From sequence record OZ196593.1: a stretch of 64,000 nucleotides of DNA, one strand, 5' to 3'. Both the position numbers and the translations under genes were made by a program. The notes below the pieces were generated by a model, which saw nothing but the letters and a program-made list of their open reading frames with translations, was not told where the DNA came from and did no database searches. This document shows positions 6,186 through 61,146 of the stretch, piece by piece. Position 1 is the first letter of the stretch. The number at the start of each line of letters is the position of its first letter.

Positions 6186-6677
6186 ATGAAGTTCATTACA
6201 GAAGATGCGCAAGCGCAGATTGTTGATGACTTAGCTGAAGCAGTAATAGACGGCGTTATTGAACGTTCGTCTGTGCCCGCGACAATCAAAGCATTCAGTG
6301 AAGCTAATGACATTGCTATTCAAGACATTGATGAAATGGTCGAAGAAGTTGACGCAGTTATTGGTGTAGTTGAAGCTATTGAACGCGGTCTCACCGTTGA
6401 AGACGCGTGTGTTGAGCTGAAATTATCAGAAAAAATGGTTAAAAAGGTATCAGTTGCAGACCGCAAAGCGGGTGGTAGCTTGATTTCTAAAAAGAAAGAC
6501 CGAAAAACTCGTGCGCGAAAAGCTTCGCAAACTACGGGTCTAAGTAAGTCTAAGAGACAAAAGACAGCACGCAAAGCAGCGAAAACGCGCAAGCGCCAGA
6601 AAGGCACTAGCACAGATCGCAAAGCTAAAAAGACTCGTGCTAAGTCTATGAAGAAACGCAAACAAATGGGGCTTTGA
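6186..6677 (+). CDS. gp68: Prohead core protein
   Basis: Acidic N-half and very basic C-half (RKARKA..T..RKAKKTRAKSMKKRK); synteny. Confidence 0.85.
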   Translation: MKFITEDAQAQIVDDLAEAVIDGVIERSSVPATIKAFSEANDIAIQDIDEMVEEVDAVIGVVEAIERGLTVEDACVELKLSEKMVKKVSVADRKAGGSLISKKKDRKTRARKASQTTGLSKSKRQKTARKAAKTRKRQKGTSTDRKAKKTRAKSMKKRKQMGL

Positions 6678-6679
6678 TT

Positions 6680-7315
6680 ATGGAATTATTAATCGAAACT
6701 TGGGGTGTATCTAGCGGTCTCGCTGAATCCCTTGGTGAAAAGCCTCTTGTTGAAGCGAAGCTACCTGCGACGAAAGGTGGCGACTTGTACATCGAGGGCA
6801 TTTTCATGCAATCGAATGTCGTAAACCGTAACGGACGTCGATACCCGAAAAAAGTTATGGAAAATGCTGTATCTAAATACATGCAAGAACAAGTCAACAC
6901 GAATCAAGCGTTGGGCGAATTGAATCACCCTAGCCGTTCGAATGTCGATCCTGCTGAAGCTGCAATTAGAATTACTGAGTTGTGGTGGGATGGTGACAAC
7001 GTAATGGGTAAAGCTATCGTACTAAATACACCGAAGGGACAAATTGTTCGTGGTCTAATCGAAGGCGGTTGGGTACCGGGCGTGAGTTCAAGAGGTCTTG
7101 GTTCAGTTAAGCAAGTTGACGGCATTAACGAAGTGACAGACTTTCGTCTGACAGTTGGAGTTGATGTAGTATGGGGCCCTAGTGCACCAAGTGCTTACGT
7201 TAAACCAGTAACTGAGTCAAATGAAGCTGCTAAAGATGTAAAAACAGAAGAAATTACCGAAAGTAATGACGCTGAATTTGCGAAACTAGCGGAAACGTTA
7301 AAAACTCTCTTATAA
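6680..7315 (+). CDS. gp21: Prohead protease
   Basis: LYIEGIFMQ, NRNGRRYP, GELNHP, GVSSRGLGS. Confidence 0.96.
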   Translation: MELLIETWGVSSGLAESLGEKPLVEAKLPATKGGDLYIEGIFMQSNVVNRNGRRYPKKVMENAVSKYMQEQVNTNQALGELNHPSRSNVDPAEAAIRITELWWDGDNVMGKAIVLNTPKGQIVRGLIEGGWVPGVSSRGLGSVKQVDGINEVTDFRLTVGVDVVWGPSAPSAYVKPVTESNEAAKDVKTEEITESNDAEFAKLAETLKTLL

Positions 7316-7318
7316 ATA
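7311..7318 (+). promoter_or_regulatory. Late promoter TATAAATA
   Basis: Exact consensus upstream of gp22. Confidence 0.85.
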
Positions 7319-7347
7319 TTAAAAACATATTTAAGGAATTGAAGAAG

Positions 7348-8190
7348 ATGCAAATCAAAGAGCAACTACTTGAAGCGGTATCGCACGACGATACTAAAAT
7401 CACTACTGCTTTGGACGGCATTTTTGAATCAGTTGAACTTTCCGAAGATGTTCGTAATAAGTTCAGCACTGTTTTCGAAAGTGTTATCAAGACAAAAGCC
7501 GTTGAGCTTGCAGAAGCGCACATCGCTGAAGCTGCTACAAAAGCGGAAGCAGTTATCACAGCACACAAAGAAGAGCTAAACGAAGCCGCTGAAAAATACG
7601 GTGAACATTTAGCTGAATCAATGCAAAACAAACTTGATTCATACCTAGACCACGTTGTTGAAGCTTGGATGAGCGAAAACAAACTAGCGGTTGAAAATGG
7701 TCTGAAAGTATCAATGTTTGACGGTTTGATGGAAGGCATGAAAAATGTTTTCGTTGAAAACAACGTACACTGCCCAGACGAAAAGATCGATATGATTGAG
7801 TCTCTTGAAGAGAACATCACTGATCTTGAATCTCGTCTTGATGTAGTAGTAGTTGAGAACCGTAAGCACAAAGAATACGCTAACTACGTAGAGAAAAACA
7901 TCATCATTGAACGCGTAACAAAAGGCATGGCTGAATCTCAGAAAGAACAAGTTTCTGACCTAGCTGAGTCAATTCGCTTCGATGAGAACTTTGAAGACAA
8001 TCTAAATAGTGTTATCAAGTTCGCTTCTGGTATCAAACTTGCTGAAAAAGAAGATGAAGACGAAGCAGACAAACCAGCTCCGAAGAAAGACGAAGATGGT
8101 GAAGACGACGCTGAGAAGAAAGACGACGAAAAGAAAATCAAAGAATCTGTAACGCCATCAATGGCTGCATATTTGAAAGCTGTCTCGTAA
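7348..8190 (+). CDS. gp22: Major prohead scaffold
   Basis: LDSYLDHVVEAWMSENKLAVENGLK; position between gp21 and gp23. Confidence 0.93.
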   Translation: MQIKEQLLEAVSHDDTKITTALDGIFESVELSEDVRNKFSTVFESVIKTKAVELAEAHIAEAATKAEAVITAHKEELNEAAEKYGEHLAESMQNKLDSYLDHVVEAWMSENKLAVENGLKVSMFDGLMEGMKNVFVENNVHCPDEKIDMIESLEENITDLESRLDVVVVENRKHKEYANYVEKNIIIERVTKGMAESQKEQVSDLAESIRFDENFEDNLNSVIKFASGIKLAEKEDEDEADKPAPKKDEDGEDDAEKKDDEKKIKESVTPSMAAYLKAVS

Positions 8191-8226
8191 TATTCGATAA
8201 GCAAATAAAAACGTAAAATTACGTTA

Positions 8227-8234
8227 TATAAATA
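8227..8234 (+). promoter_or_regulatory. Late promoter TATAAATA
   Basis: Exact consensus upstream of gp23. Confidence 0.88.
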
Positions 8235-8273
8235 CTTTTGTAAATTTTAGAACATATTAAAGGAATCATTCAA

Positions 8274-9815
8274 ATGAACCTAACTGAAAAATGGAAAGAC
8301 TTGCTTGAGGCAGACGGCGCGGAAATGCCAGAGATTGCAACTGCAACTAAGCAAAAAATCATGTCGAAAATCTTTGAAAACCAAGATCGTGACATCAACC
8401 AAGATCCAATGTATCGTGATCCACAACTTGTAGAAGCTTTCAACGCTGGTCTTAACGAAGCAGTAGTAGATGGCGACCACGGTTCTGTAGCGAACATCGC
8501 AAGCGGTCAAACAACTGGTGCTGTAACAAACATCGGTCCTACTGTAATGGGTATGGTTCGTCGTGCAATCCCTCAACTTATCGCTTTCGATATTGCGGGT
8601 GTTCAACCGATGACTGGTCCAACTAGCCAAGTGTTCACACTTCGTTCAGTTTACGGTAAAGATCCTCTTACTGGTAAAGAAGCATTCCACCCTGTTCATC
8701 AGGCTGACAGCTCTTTCTCTGGTCAAGGTGCTGCATCAACAATCGCTGATCTTCCAACAGACGCGACAGTAGTTTCTACTCCGTACAAAGCGACTGTTAC
8801 AACAGATGGCGGTACTGACGACCTACGTCACTTCCTAGCTCTAACTACAGACGCTGTAGTAGCAAGCTCAGGTGTGATGACTGCTGCTGAATACCAAGCA
8901 CTTGTAATCGGTGGTAAACTGGTTGAAGTTGACGCTGGTATGGCAACAAGCCAAGCAGAACTACAAGAGAACTTCAACGGTTCAAGCGGTAACGAATGGA
9001 ACGAAATGTCATTCCGTATCGACAAGCAAGTTGTTGAAGCGAAATCTCGTCAATTGAAAGCTCAATACTCTATCGAGCTTGCTCAAGATTTACGTGCTGT
9101 ACACGGTCTTGATGCTGACGCTGAACTAAGCGGCATTCTTGCTAACGAAGTTATGGTTGAGCTTAACCGCGAAATCGTTAACCTAGTTAACTCTCAAGCG
9201 CAAATCGGTAAGTCTGGTTGGACTAAAGGTGCAGGCGCTGCGGGTGTATTCGATTTCAGCGATGCAACAGACGTTAAAGGCGCACGTTGGGCTGGTGAAG
9301 CTTACAAAGCTCTATTGATCCAAATCGAAAAAGAAGCAAACGAAATCGGTCGTCAAACTGGTCGTGGTAACGGTAACTTCATCATTGCATCACGCAACGT
9401 AGTTTCTGCACTTTCAATGACTGATACTCTAGTTGGCCCTGCTGCGCAAGGTCTACAAGATGGCTCTATGAATACTGAAACAAATCAAACTGTTTTCGCT
9501 GGTATTCTAGGCGGTCGCTTCAAAGTGTACATTGACCAGTACGCAGTGAATGACTACTTCACAGTAGGCTTCAAAGGCGGTACTGAAATGGACGCGGGTG
9601 TGTTCTACTCACCGTACGTACCTCTGACTCCACTACGTGGTTCAGACAGCAAAAACTTCCAACCTGTAATTGGTTTCAAAACTCGTTACGGCGTTCAAGT
9701 TAACCCGTTTGCTGATCCAGATGCGACAGTAGACAAAATTGGTTCAGGTGCTCCAGTAGCTGCATCAATGGGTAAAAACTCTTACTTCCGCCGTGTATTT
9801 GTATCCGGTCTGTAA
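8274..9815 (+). CDS. gp23: Major capsid protein
   Basis: VRRAIPQLIAFDIAGVQPMTGPT, EAKSRQLKAQYSIELAQDLRAVHGLDA, GFKTRYG. Confidence 0.98.
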   Translation: MNLTEKWKDLLEADGAEMPEIATATKQKIMSKIFENQDRDINQDPMYRDPQLVEAFNAGLNEAVVDGDHGSVANIASGQTTGAVTNIGPTVMGMVRRAIPQLIAFDIAGVQPMTGPTSQVFTLRSVYGKDPLTGKEAFHPVHQADSSFSGQGAASTIADLPTDATVVSTPYKATVTTDGGTDDLRHFLALTTDAVVASSGVMTAAEYQALVIGGKLVEVDAGMATSQAELQENFNGSSGNEWNEMSFRIDKQVVEAKSRQLKAQYSIELAQDLRAVHGLDADAELSGILANEVMVELNREIVNLVNSQAQIGKSGWTKGAGAAGVFDFSDATDVKGARWAGEAYKALLIQIEKEANEIGRQTGRGNGNFIIASRNVVSALSMTDTLVGPAAQGLQDGSMNTETNQTVFAGILGGRFKVYIDQYAVNDYFTVGFKGGTEMDAGVFYSPYVPLTPLRGSDSKNFQPVIGFKTRYGVQVNPFADPDATVDKIGSGAPVAASMGKNSYFRRVFVSGL

Positions 9816-9858: not shown

Positions 9859-10962
9859 TTATGCGCAATGCAAAATGTTTTCAGCAATCAACATGCGTTT
9901 CTCTAGTTGAGCAGCACCGTACTGCGGTCCCGGTTCAACGTCAACACGCACAATCATCGTTTTCGCGATGATCTCTCTCAGTGTGCTTTGTTTCGTCACG
10001 TCGTTCATTTGTGATAGCGCGACTTCAAACTCACGACCATTCTTATAAGCACCCAATTGCTGCAACGCAATGACTACAGACGAGTCGTAAACGTGTAATA
10101 CGTTCAACTGCATTAAGATTTCAGAAGTCTTCTGAAAACGCTTTGTAGCCCCGAATTTAGACGTGTAACGATTTCGATGATCGAACGCAGCCCATTTACC
10201 GATGAGTTGAGTCTCTTCGCCTTGAAACTTCATGTGATTGTAATGCTTCAATGACATTAACTCAGCCGCACGTGGTTGCGAACAGAACCCGATTTGACCT
10301 AAGAACGAAAAGTACATGTGAGCATTCTTCTCAGATAGTGCTTTCATCGTCTCTAACCACACGCGCTCATGCGGTAAGTGATCAAGCATACCGTCAGCAA
10401 TCATCTTCTTGCAAAGCTCAATCGTCTCTGGTGCTACTGTGAAGTCTAGATCGTAGTAACGAGCATAGAAACGAGCAACGCGCAGAACACGCAACGGATC
10501 TTCAGTGAATGCATCAGTTGTATGACGAAGCACGCGATCTTTCAGATCTTGCAGACCATTGAACGGATCGATGATATCGTCAGTAGAACCCCACGTAAAT
10601 AGTGAGTTCGGTCGTTCGTCTGGTATTGCCATTGCATTGATCGTCAAGTCGCGGCGACTCAAGTCATCTTCTAGTGAAACACCCTCAGTCGTGAATTCGA
10701 AATCAGTTGTTTTATTGCCAGTGCTGCGCTCAACGCGTGCAAGTGCGACTTCGTTGTTGTATTTGTCTAGCCAAACGGGGAAGTCTGCACCGATGGTATC
10801 GCCATACATCATGTTCATTTGTTCATGAGTCGCACCGACTACAACGTAATCGACATCTTTCGGTAACGAAGAGTAGCCATCTACTTGATACAATAGCGTA
10901 TCACGCACAGCTCCGCCCACGATATATTTTTTCATGTTAAATGTACTCGCAAATTGTGTCAT
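9859..10962 (-). CDS. cca: tRNA nucleotidyltransferase (CCA-adding enzyme family)
   Basis: VGGAVRD, DVDYVV, EDDLSRRDLTINAMA, DPFNGLQDL, FTEDPLRVLRVARF. Confidence 0.92.
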   Translation of the reverse strand: MTQFASTFNMKKYIVGGAVRDTLLYQVDGYSSLPKDVDYVVVGATHEQMNMMYGDTIGADFPVWLDKYNNEVALARVERSTGNKTTDFEFTTEGVSLEDDLSRRDLTINAMAIPDERPNSLFTWGSTDDIIDPFNGLQDLKDRVLRHTTDAFTEDPLRVLRVARFYARYYDLDFTVAPETIELCKKMIADGMLDHLPHERVWLETMKALSEKNAHMYFSFLGQIGFCSQPRAAELMSLKHYNHMKFQGEETQLIGKWAAFDHRNRYTSKFGATKRFQKTSEILMQLNVLHVYDSSVVIALQQLGAYKNGREFEVALSQMNDVTKQSTLREIIAKTMIVRVDVEPGPQYGAAQLEKRMLIAENILHCA

Positions 10963-13554: not shown

Positions 13555-14082
13555 TTGGACGTGAGTCAACTTACTAAACATGCAGATACATTGACGAAAG
13601 GCGAGCTGGATGCATTCGCAAAAGAATACTACGGTCTAGATCTAGACCGTCGTAAATCAAAAGGCGCGATGACGAAAGCACTTGTCGAGCACGATCAGAC
13701 AAATGCGCCTGTTAAACCGTTACCTTGGGAAGAGCTTTTAGTTGAAACGCCAGCCGAAGAAACTGAAGTAACAGAAGAAGTGGCAGAAGCGAAAGCTCCT
13801 GCTGCTCCGATTGAAGCTGAACAAGAAACAAAAGTTGTTGAGACGAAAGTCGATGCATCATTTGTACCCGCACGCTTGCCATTCAAGCGCGACGGTGTAC
13901 CGTTCATGACTGCTTCAGCATCGGTAGTTGATTTTGTCGCTGAATTGAAAGCAGGCAAGGTTAGCTTAGAGCAATGTCCACGTAGCGATGAGAAAGCAGT
14001 TAAATCTATTCTGTTTTACATCGAACGTGACGGTAAGGTGCTTGTACGCGAAACGCGTAACAGTCGCTTTATCGAACTATAA
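13555..14082 (+). CDS. Inh-like prohead protease inhibitor paralogue
   Basis: C-terminal FYIERDGKVLVRETRNSRF resembles T4 Inh YYINRDGSVLIRETRNSSF. Confidence 0.75.
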   Translation: MDVSQLTKHADTLTKGELDAFAKEYYGLDLDRRKSKGAMTKALVEHDQTNAPVKPLPWEELLVETPAEETEVTEEVAEAKAPAAPIEAEQETKVVETKVDASFVPARLPFKRDGVPFMTASASVVDFVAELKAGKVSLEQCPRSDEKAVKSILFYIERDGKVLVRETRNSRFIEL

Positions 14083-14472: not shown

Positions 14473-15639
14473 CTAAGCAACGAATGCTACACGCTGTACC
14501 AATGTTTGTTTTTCACCCTTAAACTCTTCGTGAGTCTTTACAGTAGCTTTTACAGTGGCTTTCTCGCCCTCTGCTACGTACTCGTCTTCTTTGTTCTCAA
14601 GACGCTTAGAGCCAAACCATACAACTAAGTTGTTTTGCTCGTCGCGGAAGCGGTGAATGTACGTGTCGCCGTAGTAGCCGTCAAGTACGATTACTTTTTC
14701 AAGTGTTAGCGTGAATGTTTCGCGCTTCTTAACAGTACCGATGTACTCAGATTCGCCAAGCTCTTCAACTTTCTTCGCTTTAGCTTTCATGATTTCTTCT
14801 TTCTCTACGCCTTTGCTGTATGCAACAACTGACGCAGCTAAGAAACCCGCTTGCTTGTACTCGATGTAATCAGGCTTACATGAAGCGATAACGTTGCTCA
14901 TGAAGTCGTTAGTTGCTTCTTGCTCACCAACCCATTTGCGGATTGTTTCTGCACGCTCAGTCATCTTGTCGAAGTCAACTTTAGATAGAAGCTCATCGCG
15001 GTCATTGCGTGCTTCTTTCGTGTTTGCGTTAAGAAGACGCATTGCTTCAAACTTAGTCTCGCCACCTGCGATGTAACGACCGTCGCGCTCAACTACCATG
15101 CATACCCAAGTAAGAAGCTCGATTGTAGTGTAGCAAGGCTTCGCAGAACCGCCGCCAACGAATTCGTCACCGAAAGATTCAACTGCTTCGAAGAAAGAAG
15201 CTAGAGAGTTAACCGATTTAGTCGGGATGTAGTATTTCAAGCAAGAGCCGCCAACACGCATTTCAGTGTCTTCGTTTTTGATAACGTAAGTTACGTTACG
15301 AGCGCGGTTCGTGTTGCAGTGATCACACGTTGTATCACCAAGAAGATGACGGTGATTAGTCTCACCGTGAGAGCGAACAAGACCCGTTTCGTGGTCAAGT
15401 TGAGTTACGAAATCCCATCCGTTGAACTGTGGGTATTCGCCCGTGATAGTCACGTCGTTGTAGTACACTTTGTACCAACCGTTTACGCCTAGCACGTTTT
15501 CGTACGTCTCTTTACCAACTTCAAGAGTAAGCGCATCAACGCCAATTTTCTTAGCAATCTTGTTAGCAGCATCAACGCGTGCTGTAAGTTCAGTGATGTG
15601 ACGAGCGCGAATTCTGTAAGTTGAGTTGATAGCAGTCAT
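14473..15639 (-). CDS. Early hypothetical protein with CxxC cluster and C-terminal OB-like region
   Basis: CDHC...GGSC; own sigma70-type promoter and GAGAG leader. Confidence 0.75.
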   Translation of the reverse strand: MTAINSTYRIRARHITELTARVDAANKIAKKIGVDALTLEVGKETYENVLGVNGWYKVYYNDVTITGEYPQFNGWDFVTQLDHETGLVRSHGETNHRHLLGDTTCDHCNTNRARNVTYVIKNEDTEMRVGGSCLKYYIPTKSVNSLASFFEAVESFGDEFVGGGSAKPCYTTIELLTWVCMVVERDGRYIAGGETKFEAMRLLNANTKEARNDRDELLSKVDFDKMTERAETIRKWVGEQEATNDFMSNVIASCKPDYIEYKQAGFLAASVVAYSKGVEKEEIMKAKAKKVEELGESEYIGTVKKRETFTLTLEKVIVLDGYYGDTYIHRFRDEQNNLVVWFGSKRLENKEDEYVAEGEKATVKATVKTHEEFKGEKQTLVQRVAFVA

Positions 15640-15713: not shown

Positions 15714-15749
15714 CGCAAACCTAAAAAAGCGCAAATTAATGCGCTTAGT

Positions 15750-16727
15750 TTATTTTTCTAGTTCGTAGAAGACTGTATCACCACTCGACATAGAAGTAAC
15801 TGAGAGATTGTAACCCTCTTGTGCTCCAAGCTTGCGCATGATTCTAGTGTATAGAGATTTACGCTTCTCATTACCATCGCCAGTAGCTGTAACAACTTTG
15901 CGGCAGTTGTATTGATGAGCAAACGTAATTGCTTCTTGTGCAACTGTAGCGAATACCGTAAATGCGTTTTCAGAATCAGTGATATCGTAAGTCCATTTGC
16001 CGTTCACAGACGCGTGGAAGTGAATCTCGACTGTATCAACCGTTATGTTATCTTCCCAACCAAAGTCAATATCGTCTGAGTCTTCGTGCTGAATACCATG
16101 AGGTACTAGAACGATTTGATACATTTGATTACCGACTTCAAACAACCCGAATATTGGCTTGCGGTCTTTCGTTGGCGTATTGCCTTTCGGGTATGTTACT
16201 TTAGCTGCTCGGTCAAGTGACTCAGTAAGATTGACAGATGAAAGCCAGTCTTGCCAGTTCTTACGACTACCGATTTTTGTAAATGGGATATCGTCGTGGT
16301 CGAGCCACTGAATCGAACGGTCGTATGATTGCGACACGTTAAATCCGTTGTAGTCGTCACCGACCCATAGCCATTTGTGATGCCAGATTTGATTGACTTG
16401 TCGTGGCTTCGCGACTTTGCGTTCTGCAACGTCAACGACAATCATCTTACCAGCCGCAGGTTCTTGTACGTGATCGAACTCAGTTGATTCGTAGAAAGCA
16501 ATCGTAGACTTCTTGTAATCGATTCTAACGACGTTCGGGCAGAAAGTCGGGTTCTCAATCGAAAGAAGCGTGCGTGCTTCTGCTACGCGCTCTTTGAACT
16601 CTTCAGGTACGTAATTGATGTGTAAGTATAATGCACCGCCGATATCTTTACCCACGCCCCATTTGCTTCGTTTAACTGCTGAACCTTTTCGCGTCTTCAG
16701 CGTTGCGCGTTCAAAGATTAGATTCAT
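15750..16727 (-). CDS. Two-module late protein; N-module resembles Dnd-associated putative methyltransferase accessory domain
   Basis: See findings; co-transcribed with 16727-17323 from TCTAAATA. Confidence 0.7.
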   Translation of the reverse strand: MNLIFERATLKTRKGSAVKRSKWGVGKDIGGALYLHINYVPEEFKERVAEARTLLSIENPTFCPNVVRIDYKKSTIAFYESTEFDHVQEPAAGKMIVVDVAERKVAKPRQVNQIWHHKWLWVGDDYNGFNVSQSYDRSIQWLDHDDIPFTKIGSRKNWQDWLSSVNLTESLDRAAKVTYPKGNTPTKDRKPIFGLFEVGNQMYQIVLVPHGIQHEDSDDIDFGWEDNITVDTVEIHFHASVNGKWTYDITDSENAFTVFATVAQEAITFAHQYNCRKVVTATGDGNEKRKSLYTRIMRKLGAQEGYNLSVTSMSSGDTVFYELEK

Positions 16728-17323
16728 TATCGTCTCGATTGGTCGTTTATAATGTGACGCATCAAGTTAACTGCGTAATCCGTTTGACCGGTCATAGCAG
16801 CCGATGCAGCTTTATCGACGTAGAACGTACTGTCTTCGATCATGTTCAGATGCTTATAGATCTCTCTGAAGTCGTGACGGTCGTATTCTTTATCAGACCA
16901 ACGTAAAGCACCTGCTTTTTTGTCGTCGTCGTGAACACGCTTGTACTCATCGATAACACGAATCATTTCCGAAGCTTGCTTCTTCATCATCATGTTGTCC
17001 ATCTTCAGACGTTTCGCAGCTTTTGCTACTTCGTCTTGAGGACGGTCGTGCTGTATAGCGTCCATTAGAATGTTCATGCTATGCAGAGTATCAATGCCCG
17101 CCTTTTCCATAGCTTGTTGTTGTCGCTGAAGCGTAGAATTGTGCTTGCCTAGCTCACCCGATGCTGTAGCACTCGCGATAAGACCAGAAAATACACTCCA
17201 CCAACCGCCTTTCTTCTGTATACGCTTCTTAACTTCACCTTTCGAACCGCTAGTAAAGTCTTTGAATTGCGCCCACTTACCAGAAAGTGTTGCTTTTTCA
17301 CGTTCAGTCAAAAATTCAATCAT
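16727..17323 (-). CDS. Late helical protein, candidate head-internal protein
   Basis: MIEFLTE N-terminus; TCTAAATA promoter and AAGGGG SD. Confidence 0.7.
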   Translation of the reverse strand: MIEFLTEREKATLSGKWAQFKDFTSGSKGEVKKRIQKKGGWWSVFSGLIASATASGELGKHNSTLQRQQQAMEKAGIDTLHSMNILMDAIQHDRPQDEVAKAAKRLKMDNMMMKKQASEMIRVIDEYKRVHDDDKKAGALRWSDKEYDRHDFREIYKHLNMIEDSTFYVDKAASAAMTGQTDYAVNLMRHIINDQSRR

Positions 17324-17349: not shown

Positions 17350-17357
17350 TATTTAGA
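17350..17357 (-). promoter_or_regulatory. Late promoter variant TCTAAATA
   Basis: Minus strand, 27 nt upstream of 17323 start, just downstream of terminator. Confidence 0.65.
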
Positions 17358-17365
17358 CACAAACG

Positions 17366-17391
17366 AAAAAAGGTAGCCGAAGCTACCTTTT
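17366..17391. terminator. Intrinsic terminator
   Basis: AAAAAAGGTAGC-CGAA-GCTACCTTTT. Confidence 0.85.
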
Positions 17392-18057: not shown

Positions 18058-18354
18058 TTATTGTACTTGTTTGTCACCTAGTCGCACTTCGACTGGTGAT
18101 TGAATTTCTTCAAATTCTGTGCCTGTGTAAGCAACATATGCTTCGTGGAAGCTATCTTCACCTGACTCAACGACAATATCAGTTTCATTATCGAACGTGT
18201 ACAACACATGATCATACAGTTCTGTACCTAAATTGTACATCGGTTCAGTTGTGAAAGGAACACCACAAGGAGTCGTCAACATCACTAGTTCTGTGTTGAC
18301 AGCGACGCGGTCGATATCAGGGAACTGATTGAATTGCTGTTCGAGTATGTTCAT
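18058..18354 (-). CDS. Early hypothetical protein
   Basis: 98 aa ORF directly after early promoter. Confidence 0.65.
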   Translation of the reverse strand: MNILEQQFNQFPDIDRVAVNTELVMLTTPCGVPFTTEPMYNLGTELYDHVLYTFDNETDIVVESGEDSFHEAYVAYTGTEFEEIQSPVEVRLGDKQVQ

Positions 18355-18906: not shown

Positions 18907-19422
18907 CTACCCCAGAACTACGAATGAATTGGATAGATTGTCACGAACAAGCAGTTCGCCGCGCAGTGCAACCCAATATGCGATTGTCTGCAACTCGTGA
19001 GTATCGCGATTGCCGATTAAGTACGCGTGAATGTCATCGTGCTTAACAACTTGGAACAATTCACCCTCATGGCGATACGATGGCGTCCATTTCGGCTTGA
19101 ATTCGTCTTGGATTTGAATCGTGACTTCAATGTGTTCGACTGGATTGCTGATAACCACCTCTAGTTCAACGTCAGACCCTTCTACAGTCGTTTTAACGAT
19201 TGGCGCGTCTGATTCATCGACTAAATCACATGTCGTCTCTGAGCTGATTACAGACGTGTCTAGATAATCATCAGGAAAGCTAGTGATCTTATCGACGTTA
19301 GCCATGATCAATCGAATCGCTGCTGATTTGGTTAGCGTCTTGTCGTATTCGATATCAGTGTGTGCAAGCTGAAACTCGATGACTTCGCGCTTCGTCTTGC
19401 CTTTCAAGTATTCTTCGTTCAT
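18907..19422 (-). CDS. inh: Inhibitor of prohead protease (syntenic copy)
   Basis: IAYWVALRGELLVRDNLSNSFVVL motif; divergent from uvsW as in T4. Confidence 0.7.
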   Translation of the reverse strand: MNEEYLKGKTKREVIEFQLAHTDIEYDKTLTKSAAIRLIMANVDKITSFPDDYLDTSVISSETTCDLVDESDAPIVKTTVEGSDVELEVVISNPVEHIEVTIQIQDEFKPKWTPSYRHEGELFQVVKHDDIHAYLIGNRDTHELQTIAYWVALRGELLVRDNLSNSFVVLG

Positions 19423-60285: not shown

Positions 60286-61146
60286 ATGATTATTTTCGAG
60301 GCATTTTCGCGCCCTGTGCCTTATAAATGGGTCAGACCGAGCGAAATTGAATTCACAGTAAACGGTACGAAGTATCGAGCAACGTACAATATCACGTACA
60401 GAGACGGCAGCTCACAAATGTACATCGACTTCCAATGGAATGACGGTGGGCAATGGTCGTACAAGCTGAAGAAGGGCGGAGACCCGAAAGACGCAATGGC
60501 TGTATTTGCGACTGTACTCGCAGCGGGTGAAGAGAAAGCAAATCAAGAGAAGCCGGATTTCATTACGTTTAGCGCGTTCTCAGATGAAGATGATGCAGAC
60601 GCACACAAACGATTCAGACTGTACAAACGCATGGCTGATCGCTACGCTAAACAACTTGGCTACACGATGCATGTTGACGGTCGCAATTTCATCTTGAAGA
60701 ACAACAACCCATCGACGGTGAGACGTATACCGAATGACGGCATCATGATTGATGACGAACTGACGTACGTTGAAATGCCACGCACGAACGAATTCACATG
60801 GGCTACAATGTTCGAGTGTACTCGTCCGGGTGATTTTGAAATGGTGCGTTTTAAGAATGGCTTTGCTACAATCAAGCGTCAGACTGAAGATAAAGTCGAG
60901 ATCATGGTTAAAGCAGGTGGTCAAACGTATGACAATTTAGATTCACCAGAAGTGTGGGACAAGTTGAACGGTGAGTTGTTTGTTACAGCGTCATGGCGCC
61001 CAGATGAACCACAACCGATGTCAGAGAAAGCATCATTGCTTGAGAATGGTTGGATGATTTTGACTGAGACATCTACAGTGTACAAAGTAGAAAATGTTGC
61101 AGACTTCGAAGCGATTTGGGGTTACAAATTAGAGTCTATTAGATAG
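60286..61146 (+). CDS. Late protein, candidate head-internal protein
   Basis: MIIFE start after late promoter; N-domain shared with 15750-16727 C-module. Confidence 0.7.
   Translation: MIIFEAFSRPVPYKWVRPSEIEFTVNGTKYRATYNITYRDGSSQMYIDFQWNDGGQWSYKLKKGGDPKDAMAVFATVLAAGEEKANQEKPDFITFSAFSDEDDADAHKRFRLYKRMADRYAKQLGYTMHVDGRNFILKNNNPSTVRRIPNDGIMIDDELTYVEMPRTNEFTWATMFECTRPGDFEMVRFKNGFATIKRQTEDKVEIMVKAGGQTYDNLDSPEVWDKLNGELFVTASWRPDEPQPMSEKASLLENGWMILTETSTVYKVENVADFEAIWGYKLESIR

What the first reader, a model, noticed from the sequence alone, without database searches (positions are those of the whole stretch)
16218..16727. Late phage protein module resembling the accessory domain of the DNA-phosphorothioation-associated putative methyltransferase
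Seen: aa 22-165 of the 15750-16727 ORF read GVGKDIGGALYLH...PNVVR...IAFYESTEFDHVQEPAAGKMIVVDV...NQIWHHKWLWVGDDY...KIGSRKNWQDWL. From memory, these motifs have the same order and spacing as the non-catalytic region of the Dnd-cluster putative methyltransferase family (TIGR04096-type: GKxLPxALYVH...LVK...ISYLxYPDFDxDPHPAL...VDL...NPPILHRKExFVxxDY...IGTRxxWxxxL). There is no SAM-binding DYGCG motif in this ORF. The gene is late-expressed (TCTAAATA) and the module is bounded by gp21-cleavage-like sites (LIFE at the start, NLTE|S at aa 167-170). Inference: a capsid-packaged, injected stand-alone domain that mimics or interferes with host phosphorothioate (Dnd/Ssp) defence. This would be an undescribed anti-defence system.
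Basis: partly seen in the sequence, partly recalled or inferred. Interest (0 to 1): 0.82.

Follow-up and report, generated by a model that had tools for sequence, protein, structure and literature searches.

The report
Virion-packaged partner domain of a methyltransferase
The stretch encodes a very conserved, uncharacterised protein domain that nearly always works next to one particular methyltransferase; in this Vibrio phage the two halves are separate genes, and both proteins were detected in particles of a sister phage, so they are probably injected together with the DNA.

Summary
The sequence observation holds. Residues 1-170 of the minus-strand ORF 15750-16727 (Vibrio phage K566, VPHK566_0017; orthologue KVP40.0371) match the C-terminal third of TIGR04096. 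The match is weak (E 9e-4) but collinear, and relatives match it at E 4e-10.

The domain ("X") is not a Dnd-specific accessory part. It is a large family with no Pfam model (838 clusters at 50% identity) and no fold match in the PDB. Its polar residues are almost invariant, including HHKW.

X sits directly beside one Methyltransf_23-like methyltransferase (MT):
- in 32 of 34 giant polyvalent proteins;
- in many 340-500 aa fusions, in either order;
- as a neighbouring gene in Planctomycetota.

A natural X-MT fusion matches that MT end to end (E 5e-83).

Published virion mass spectrometry of the sister phage 6E351A detected the X protein, its operon partner and the MT.

My best reading is a split, head-packaged, injected two-part modifying enzyme, probably acting on DNA. 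A decoy is unlikely. An anti-defence role is plausible but untested, and nothing ties it specifically to phosphorothioate defence. Interest is moderate to high.

The parts
15750..16727 (-). Whole gene VPHK566_0017, 325 aa (X domain plus C-terminal domain). Orthologue of KVP40.0371; PHROG 16075.
16218..16727 (-). X domain, aa 1-170 (family core about aa 8-165). This is the finding's stretch. It is 74-78% identical across KVP40, nt-1 and F86. The AF2 model has pLDDT 95, with no PDB fold match.
16710..16727 (-). N-terminal leader MNLIFE (aa 1-6) with I-x-E. It is absent from most non-T4 relatives, whose match starts at about aa 8. Candidate capsid-targeting and processing leader (inferred).
16371..16382 (-). 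Codons of the H116-H117-K118-W119 motif, 99-100% conserved over 158 diverse domains.
16221..16232 (-). N166-L167-T168-E169 at the domain boundary. The stand-alone X proteins of phages D479 and 1.081.O end 1-3 residues after this motif.
15750..16217 (-). C-terminal domain, aa 171-325. It evolves fast (45% identity to KVP40, 27% to nt-1). It resembles DUF6934 weakly and PHROG 6387; paralogues in K566 have orthologues found in virions.
16727..17323 (-). Upstream gene VPHK566_0018 (198 aa, PHROG 16422), overlapping the target by TAATG. The pair is adjacent in all six schizoT4 relatives examined. Its orthologue gave 21 and 34 counts in particles. Its N-terminus carries L5-T-E7.
17350..17357 (-). 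Late-promoter-like TCTAAATA, 27 nt before the ATG of VPHK566_0018. Conserved in position in KVP40, nt-1, 1.081.O, F86 and VS1.
17368..17391 (-). Terminator-like hairpin just upstream of the promoter-like element; it marks the start of the two-gene unit.
15727..15746 (-). Terminator-like hairpin 4 nt after the stop codon of the target; it marks the end of the two-gene unit.
60286..61146 (+). Paralogue carrying the same kind of domain as the target's C-terminal half (PHROG 6387). Its N-terminus is MIIFE. Its orthologue VP6E351A_0094 was detected in particles.

Best explanation
Shown:
- The stretch encodes domain X, one half of a conserved two-part module. The other half is a Methyltransf_23-like class I SAM methyltransferase (MT).
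- TIGR04096 is one fused MT-X branch of this module.
- In K566 and all its schizoT4 Vibrio-phage relatives the module is split. X is the N-terminal domain of VPHK566_0017. MT is VPHK566_0100, at record positions 67816-68466, outside the window.
- Both proteins, and the operon partner 0018, were detected in particles of the sister phage.

Inferred:
- The proteins are made late and loaded into the prohead. A short N-terminal I/L-x-E leader would direct loading and be trimmed by the gp21-type protease. For 0017, the C-terminal PHROG-6387-type domain may also help.
- They are ejected with the DNA and act together as a modifying enzyme at the start of infection.
- The likeliest target is DNA. X would supply substrate binding or a second catalytic step through its basic N-terminal hairpin and its invariant K/H/D/E/HHK/S residues.
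- The purpose would be to protect incoming DNA from restriction-type defences, as proposed for methylase modules of polyvalent proteins.
For: Family and fold:
- 838 representative clusters at E<=1e-3, found both as stand-alone proteins of about 160 aa and inside proteins of 3000-4800 aa.
- No Pfam model covers the domain: 98 members were scanned.
- The AF2 model has pLDDT 95. Nothing in the PDB matches (best E 0.1, TM 0.27). The only hit in BFVD is a homologue inside a giant viral protein.
- Near-invariant polar residues over 158 domains. The segment aa 8-30 is basic, median +4.

Pairing with MT:
- MT lies directly beside X, in either order, in 32 of 34 representatives longer than 1000 aa and in 22 of 47 of 301-1000 aa.
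- In Planctomycetota, an MT domain lies in the same ORF or within about 1.5 kb of X in 30 of 56 loci.
- In IMG/VR, 31 of 80 loci have the two fused and 8 have them adjacent.
- The giant proteins carry LPD3, LPD38, DarA_C and SNF2 domains, so they are polyvalent proteins (PMC5512222).

The K566 partner:
- VPHK566_0100 matches the dyad MT profile at E 6e-20, and it is the only such gene in the genome.
- Its relatives carry PF13489. LDYGAG is invariant. The model has a class I methyltransferase fold.
- The natural fusion P0025 matches the 0100 family end to end, E 5e-83.
- X and MT occur in the same Vibrio phages: 51 and 49 records.

Packaging and timing:
- Particle mass spectrometry of 6E351A: 0018 (the X protein) 9/14 counts, 0019 21/34, 0103 (MT) 31/79.
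- A conserved late-type promoter.
- N-terminal [LI]xE leaders are shared with scaffold, protease and capsid proteins. The targeting-leader concept comes from PMC9026906.

DNA as target:
- Bacterial neighbours of X and MT are DNA-directed: SF2 helicase/PLD, HNH, UvrD plus PD-(D/E)xK, DndB and PAPS reductase.
Against: - No activity, substrate or ligand is known for X or for this MT clade.
- The MT's nearest solved structures are small-molecule methyltransferases, with TM only 0.4-0.5, so DNA as substrate is not indicated by the fold.
- The particle preparation was PEG-precipitated. Its 94 identified proteins include dUTPase, thymidylate synthase and DNA ligase, so low counts may be carry-over.
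- Processing at the Glu sites is unverified. [LI]xE within the first 10 residues occurs in 16% of K566 ORFs.
- In 39 of 80 viral loci no MT lies within 10 kb. Whole-genome co-occurrence was checked only for K566 (whole genome), the schizoT4 phage records and one 317-kb contig.
- No PADLOC family matches, and the authors' table lists no defence or anti-defence HMM hit.
Confidence: 0.5

Rival explanations
1. One reading: a packaged stand-alone copy of the accessory domain of the Dnd-associated methyltransferase. It would act without enzymatic partners, as a mimic or competitor that blocks host phosphorothioate-dependent restriction (DndFGH, SspE).
For: - Homology to the C-terminal part of TIGR04096.
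- Presence in particles.
- Dnd_ABCDEFGH is among the systems listed for susceptible V. crassostreae strains.
- DndB and PAPS-reductase genes lie near X-MT in a few bacterial loci.
Against: - The phage keeps the cognate MT, it co-occurs with X in the same phages, and it is also found in particles.
- X is paired with MT almost everywhere.
- The invariant polar residues fit a constant ligand or chemistry rather than mimicry.
- dnd-type neighbours were seen in only 3-6 of 56 loci.
Confidence: 0.08
2. X and MT modify phage DNA, or a nucleotide precursor, in the cytoplasm before packaging. Their presence in particle preparations would be carry-over or passive trapping, not delivery.
For: - The particle preparation contains cytoplasmic enzymes.
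- These phages hypermodify their DNA: dPreQ1 replaces 15% of dG (PMC12028318).
- One X-bearing phage-like contig carries queuosine-type genes nearby.
Against: - MT abundance of 55 is comparable with the tail tube protein at 47/58 counts.
- All three proteins carry N-terminal [LI]xE leaders like the head-core proteins.
- X-MT is a standard constituent of polyvalent proteins, which are predicted to be injected.
- The only modified base the paper reports is dPreQ1; whether other modified nucleosides were searched for was not checked here.
Confidence: 0.2
3. The injected X-MT pair methylates a host protein or RNA rather than DNA, analogous to the packaged Alt ADP-ribosyltransferase that acts on host RNA polymerase.
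For: - The MT fold is closest to small-molecule and non-DNA methyltransferases.
- Polyvalent proteins hold many protein-modifying domains (PMC5512222; ART-PolyVal sits next to X-MT in P0038).
- An Alt-like protein is abundant in the same particles.
Against: - Bacterial neighbours of X-MT are DNA-directed nucleases and helicases.
- X has a consistently basic hairpin.
Confidence: 0.15
4. X is a non-enzymatic internal head protein (DNA-condensing or scaffolding-like). Its occurrence in polyvalent proteins would only reflect a packaging role.
For: - It lies in the head-gene neighbourhood between two inh-like genes.
- It is present in particles.
- It has a basic segment.
Against: - Chromosomal copies in Planctomycetota sit next to MT and defence-type genes, with no phage structural genes recognised among the neighbours scanned.
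- The extreme conservation of polar residues is atypical for fast-evolving internal proteins.
Confidence: 0.07

Closest known systems
TIGR04096 (dnd_rel_methyl, DNA phosphorothioation-associated putative methyltransferase; function untested)
   Same: Its C-terminal region (profile positions about 318-465) is homologous to X. Its N-terminal half is the same kind of methyltransferase as the K566 partner; family members hit both halves.
   Different: The K566 protein scores 18 bits against a cut-off of 150, has no methyltransferase domain in the same polypeptide, carries an unrelated C-terminal domain, and is not next to dnd genes.
Polyvalent proteins of phages and conjugative elements, including the DarB-type methylase-helicase dyad (Iyer et al. 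2017, PMC5512222)
   Same: X-MT is embedded in giant proteins with LPD3, LPD38, DarA_C and SNF2 domains. The concept of effectors delivered with the DNA, some of them methylases proposed to protect it, fits the particle data.
   Different: - Here the module is split into small separate proteins in a T4-like phage.
- The methyltransferase is Methyltransf_23-like, not the EcoKI/TaqI-like adenine methylase with LPD36.
- X matches none of the LPD families present in Pfam. I could not check whether it equals an LPD that never became a Pfam family.
T4 internal head proteins and Alt (capsid-targeting leader, gp21 processing, ejection; PMC9026906)
   Same: Late expression signal, head-gene neighbourhood, N-terminal I/L-x-E leader, detection in particles, and a possible role against host restriction.
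   Different: There is no sequence relationship. The leader would be 6 rather than 10 residues. Cleavage and ejection are unverified.
DUF6934 (PF22028) / PHROG 6387
   Same: The C-terminal domain (aa 171-325) resembles them weakly (E 1e-3 and 6e-8). K566 has three further paralogues.
   Different: The match is below Pfam's cut-off (19.6 against 27 bits), and the function of those families is unknown.

Membership tests
TIGR04096 dnd_rel_methyl | Whole-protein score at or above the curated cut-off (150 bits) | tested here: not met
   15.6 bits for the full protein and 18.1 bits for aa 1-170.
TIGR04096 dnd_rel_methyl | N-terminal SAM methyltransferase domain in the same polypeptide | tested here: not met
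   No D-x-G-x-G motif and no methyltransferase family hit. The MT profile hits only VPHK566_0100 elsewhere in the genome.
TIGR04096 dnd_rel_methyl | C-terminal domain homologous to profile positions about 320-465 | tested here: met
   E 9e-4, collinear over aa 24-164. Family members reach E 4.4e-10 and 1.3e-5.
TIGR04096 dnd_rel_methyl | Genomic association with dnd genes | tested here: not met
   The annotated phage neighbourhood has no dnd genes. In bacterial relatives, DndB appears in 3 and PAPS reductase in 6 of 56 loci.
X-domain family (uncurated; partner of a Methyltransf_23-like methyltransferase) | Conserved core with G-K, Y..H, F-D...E-P, H-H-K-W, Y.G-F, S..W | tested here: met
   All are present in the window protein. 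Each is 92-100% conserved over 158 domains; the family profile gives E 1e-102.
X-domain family (uncurated; partner of a Methyltransf_23-like methyltransferase) | Cognate methyltransferase fused, adjacent, or in the same genome | tested here: met
   VPHK566_0100 is 51 kb away. The fusion P0025 links the two families. Both occur in the same set of phages.
Polyvalent proteins (Iyer et al. 2017) | Several domains of disparate activity in one large polypeptide delivered with the DNA | tested here: inconclusive
   The K566 protein has only two domains and 325 aa. Its X domain is shared with genuine polyvalent proteins, and it was detected in particles.
T4-type leader-bearing packaged head proteins | N-terminal leader ending in I/L-x-E that is removed by the prohead protease | not testable with these tools
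   The motif I4-F5-E6 is present and conserved. Cleavage needs peptide-level data.
T4-type leader-bearing packaged head proteins | Presence in mature particles | tested here: met
   Published counts of 9 and 14 for the 6E351A orthologue (the representative of that phage group, MYOV011v1_p0185, is 99% identical over aa 1-170). Caveat: the preparation was PEG-precipitated.
DUF6934 (PF22028) | Score at or above the gathering cut-off (27 bits) | tested here: not met
   17.6 and 19.6 bits on aa 251-317.

The most novel reading that the evidence does not exclude
X is a new catalytic fold that, together with its dedicated SAM methyltransferase, installs or edits a so far undescribed nucleic-acid modification. 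One possibility is a modification on or next to the backbone, which would explain the occasional link to DndB/DndC-type genes. Phages and conjugative elements would inject this two-part enzyme to disarm modification-sensing restriction at the moment of entry. In cells the same pair would be the 'self-marking' arm of an undescribed defence system, common in Planctomycetota.
Probability: 0.12. Interest if true: 0.9.

Novelty: new variant of a known kind. Interest (0 to 1): 0.62.

Why it matters
- X is a widespread domain (838 clusters at 50% identity) with a confident predicted fold that matches nothing solved. It has no Pfam entry, almost invariant putative active-site residues, and a near-obligate partnership with one methyltransferase clade.
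- It occurs in injected-type giant proteins, in bacterial defence-island-like neighbourhoods, and, split in two, in a well-studied group of T4-like Vibrio phages for which particle proteomics already exists. That makes an otherwise anonymous module approachable.
- If the pair is a delivered DNA-modifying enzyme, it adds a new class to the packaged counter-restriction proteins. It would also give a function to TIGR04096 and to a recurrent block of polyvalent proteins.

Tried and rejected
Searches that led nowhere:
- Pfam on the target and on 98 family members: no family for X.
- PADLOC: no hit for the target, its neighbours or the fused relatives.
- PDB by sequence, single protein and profile: nothing.
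- Foldseek of the X model against the PDB: nothing below E 0.1.
- The first word-indexed protein search found only close phage orthologues.
- NCBIfam and Pfam gave nothing for VPHK566_0100 itself. Its identity as a methyltransferase rests on my own iterated profile, its relatives' PF13489 hits, the LDYGAG motif and the predicted fold.
- VPHK566_0018 has no relatives next to X outside the schizoT4 phages.
- Literature searches for TIGR04096, the family name, KVP40.0371 and KVP40.0066 found no functional study.

Limits:
- I did not read how many host strains carry Dnd (one search fetched the wrong part of the table).

The leader comparison rests on PMC9026906 and on the window's own sequences.

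Full report
**What is there.** The window is bases 1-64000 of Vibrio phage K566 (OZ196521.1), a 255-kb KVP40-like schizoT4 phage isolated on Vibrio crassostreae. The finding covers aa 1-170 of a 325-aa minus-strand ORF, 15750..16727 (VPHK566_0017, 'hypothetical protein'; orthologue KVP40.0371; PHROG 16075, unknown function). All quoted motifs are present. The ORF has no D-x-G-x-G motif.

**The resemblance is real.** NCBIfam hmmscan returns TIGR04096 as the only hit. Residues 24-164 align collinearly with profile positions 322-465 of 478. E is 9e-4 and 18 bits for the domain alone, far below the family cut-off of 150. Relatives of the domain hit the same part of TIGR04096 more strongly: P0154 at E 4.4e-10 and P0089 at 1.3e-5. 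One relative, P0079, also hits the N-terminal methyltransferase part.

**The protein is modular.**
- The N-terminal domain is 74-78% identical between K566, KVP40, nt-1 and F86.
- The C-terminal 155 residues are only 45% identical to KVP40 and 27% to nt-1.
- In phages D479 and 1.081.O the N-terminal domain is a stand-alone protein of 170-175 aa that ends 1-3 residues after the L-x-E motif at the boundary.

**What the domain is.** I call it X.
- An exhaustive profile search found 838 representative clusters at E<=1e-3 and 539 at E<=1e-10. They include stand-alone proteins of about 160 aa and internal domains of proteins of 3000-4800 aa.
- One such giant protein (P0031) carries LPD3, LPD38, DarA_C, an SNF2-type helicase and methyltransferase domains. 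These giants are therefore polyvalent proteins in the sense of Iyer et al. 2017 (PMC5512222).
- No Pfam family covers X: 98 members were scanned and gave only noise.
- Over 158 diverse domains these residues are 92-100% conserved: G26, K27, Y34, H36, Y39, F84, D85, E89, P90, H116, H117, K118, W119, V122, Y126, F129, S138 and W141.
- The segment aa 8-30 is basic in 89% of members.
- An AlphaFold2 model built on a 98-sequence alignment is confident (pLDDT 95, pTM 0.89). It has no match among solved structures (best E 0.1, TM 0.27). In the viral predicted-structure library it matches only a homologue inside a giant protein.
- This pattern points to an enzyme or a binder of one constant ligand, not to a passive accessory part.

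**The key association.** With a profile iterated locally from the region next to X in a bacterial fusion, I found one kind of Methyltransf_23-like class I methyltransferase (MT) directly beside X, on either side.
- It is there in 32 of 34 representatives longer than 1000 aa and in 22 of 47 of 301-1000 aa. Pfam confirms PF13489 in several of these.
- A scan of bacterial genomes returned 56 loci, nearly all Planctomycetota; the search pattern is narrow, so this is biased. In 30 of them an MT domain lies in the same ORF or within about 1.5 kb of X, often as a divergently transcribed neighbouring gene.
- In 80 IMG/VR loci, X is fused to MT in 31, adjacent in 8, 2-10 kb away in 2, and without MT within 10 kb in 39.
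- TIGR04096 is thus one fused MT-X branch of a much larger dyad.

**The phage has the other half.**
- A six-frame search of the whole K566 genome with the MT profile gives a single hit at E 6e-20: VPHK566_0100, record 67816-68466, 216 aa, just outside the window.
- It is KVP40.0066. Many of its relatives carry PF13489.
- Its alignment shows an invariant L-D-Y-G-A-G SAM-binding motif.
- Its AlphaFold2 model (pLDDT 91) matches class I SAM methyltransferases, with 227 PDB hits at E<=1e-3.
- A natural 387-aa fusion, P0025, joins X to a methyltransferase that matches the VPHK566_0100 family end to end (E 5e-83).
- In the phage collection, X occurs in 51 records and this MT in 49. All are Vibrio schizoT4-type phages.
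- A 317-kb IMG/VR contig also carries both, 46 kb apart.

**Expression and packaging.**
- The target overlaps the stop codon of VPHK566_0018 (TAATG).
- That gene is preceded by TCTAAATA, 27 nt before its ATG, with terminator-like hairpins before the promoter-like element and after the target.
- The octamer lies at the same offset from the ATG (-33/-34 in my script's numbering) in K566, KVP40, nt-1, 1.081.O and F86, and is also present upstream of the VS1 gene, where I set the start only approximately. It also precedes structural genes in the window. CTAAATA is the reported late consensus of the schizoT-even phage Aeh1 (PMC1524935).
- Particle mass spectrometry of the sister phage 6E351A has been published (PMC12028318). 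It lists VP6E351A_0018 (the X protein, 325 aa) with 9 and 14 counts, VP6E351A_0019 with 21 and 34, and VP6E351A_0103 (the MT) with 31 and 79. The authors put the X protein under 'Defense?', with no HMM hit behind it.
- Caveat: the particles were PEG-precipitated, and the 94 identified proteins include cytoplasmic enzymes.
- The target, 0018 and 0100 all carry an [LI]-x-E near the N-terminus (E6, E7 and E11), as do the scaffold, protease and capsid proteins. Only 6.5% of K566 ORFs have such a motif starting within the first five residues, and 16% within ten. This fits the T4 concept of a short capsid-targeting leader removed by the prohead protease (PMC9026906), but it is post hoc and unverified.
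- The target's C-terminal domain belongs to a paralogous set (PHROG 6387, weakly DUF6934). Two orthologues from that set are also found in particles, at abundance 38.5 and 44.

**Context in bacteria.** Near X-MT in Planctomycetota lie SF2 helicase/PLD genes (13 loci), kinase-Macro (8), PAPS reductase (6), HNH (5), UvrD plus PD-(D/E)xK (4) and DndB (3). One locus has PAPS reductase, DndB, MT and X in a row. This looks like defence islands and DNA-directed systems. It gives some substance to the 'Dnd-associated' name, but the link is a minority one.

**Interpretation.**
- Shown: the homology, the family, the MT partnership, the split arrangement in K566, and detection of all parts in particle preparations.
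- Inferred: late synthesis, leader-dependent loading, ejection, joint action on DNA at entry, and a counter-restriction purpose.
- The decoy model loses its premise because the methyltransferase is present.

**Novelty.**
- Packaged counter-defence proteins and polyvalent proteins are known.
- What appears undescribed is the X family, its fold, its dyad with this MT clade, and the split, particle-borne form in T4-like phages.
- I could not exclude that X is one of the LPDs of Iyer et al. that never entered Pfam.

Noticed in passing
window 60286-61146 (+): A 286-aa protein of PHROG 6387 shares the target's C-terminal domain type (pairwise E 1.6e-5) and starts MIIFE, much like the target's MNLIFE. 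Its 6E351A orthologue is in particles (16 and 61 counts). In 6E351A its orthologue lies next to an Alt-like ADP-ribosyltransferase gene (122 and 233 counts).
   Followed up: partly
window 6186-9815 (+) and 18058-18354 (-): Scaffold, protease, second scaffold and major capsid proteins, and the small ORF 0020, all have [LI]-x-E starting at residue 3 or 4. Eight of the 24 K566 ORFs with such a motif in the first five residues lie between 6 and 19 kb.
   Followed up: partly
window 13561-14082 (+) and 18907-19422 (-): Two genes annotated as prohead protease inhibitor (inh-like) bracket the minus-strand cluster that holds the target. KVP40 and nt-1 have the same arrangement.
   Followed up: no
record OZ196521.1 66373-67809 (outside the window; L064:2373-3809): The 478-aa gene just upstream of the MT partner, downstream of the late sigma factor gene, is also marked 'Defense?' by the authors (orthologue VP6E351A_0102). 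It has no Pfam or NCBIfam hit and no particle abundance listed.
   Followed up: partly
L008-L063 (bacterial genome contigs): Chromosomal X genes found with the HHKW pattern are almost all in Planctomycetota. They are often divergently paired with the MT and sit near helicase or nuclease, HNH, DndB and PAPS-reductase genes. A subset are proteins of about 700 aa with an HNH-associated repeat, an MT-like region and a C-terminal X.
   Followed up: partly
L073 (213-kb metagenomic contig, X at 10001-10513): A stand-alone X gene lies 6-10 kb from a queuosine-type gene set (QueF, QueC, PTPS, radical SAM, GTP cyclohydrolase I). K566-type phages also carry a 7-deazaguanine pathway. The link may be coincidental.
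   Followed up: no
window 14473-15639 (-): VPHK566_0016 (388 aa, PHROG 2319) lies just downstream of the target on the same strand, after a terminator-like hairpin. Its C-terminal 100 residues match several other PHROGs of unknown function. No particle abundance is listed for its orthologue.
   Followed up: no
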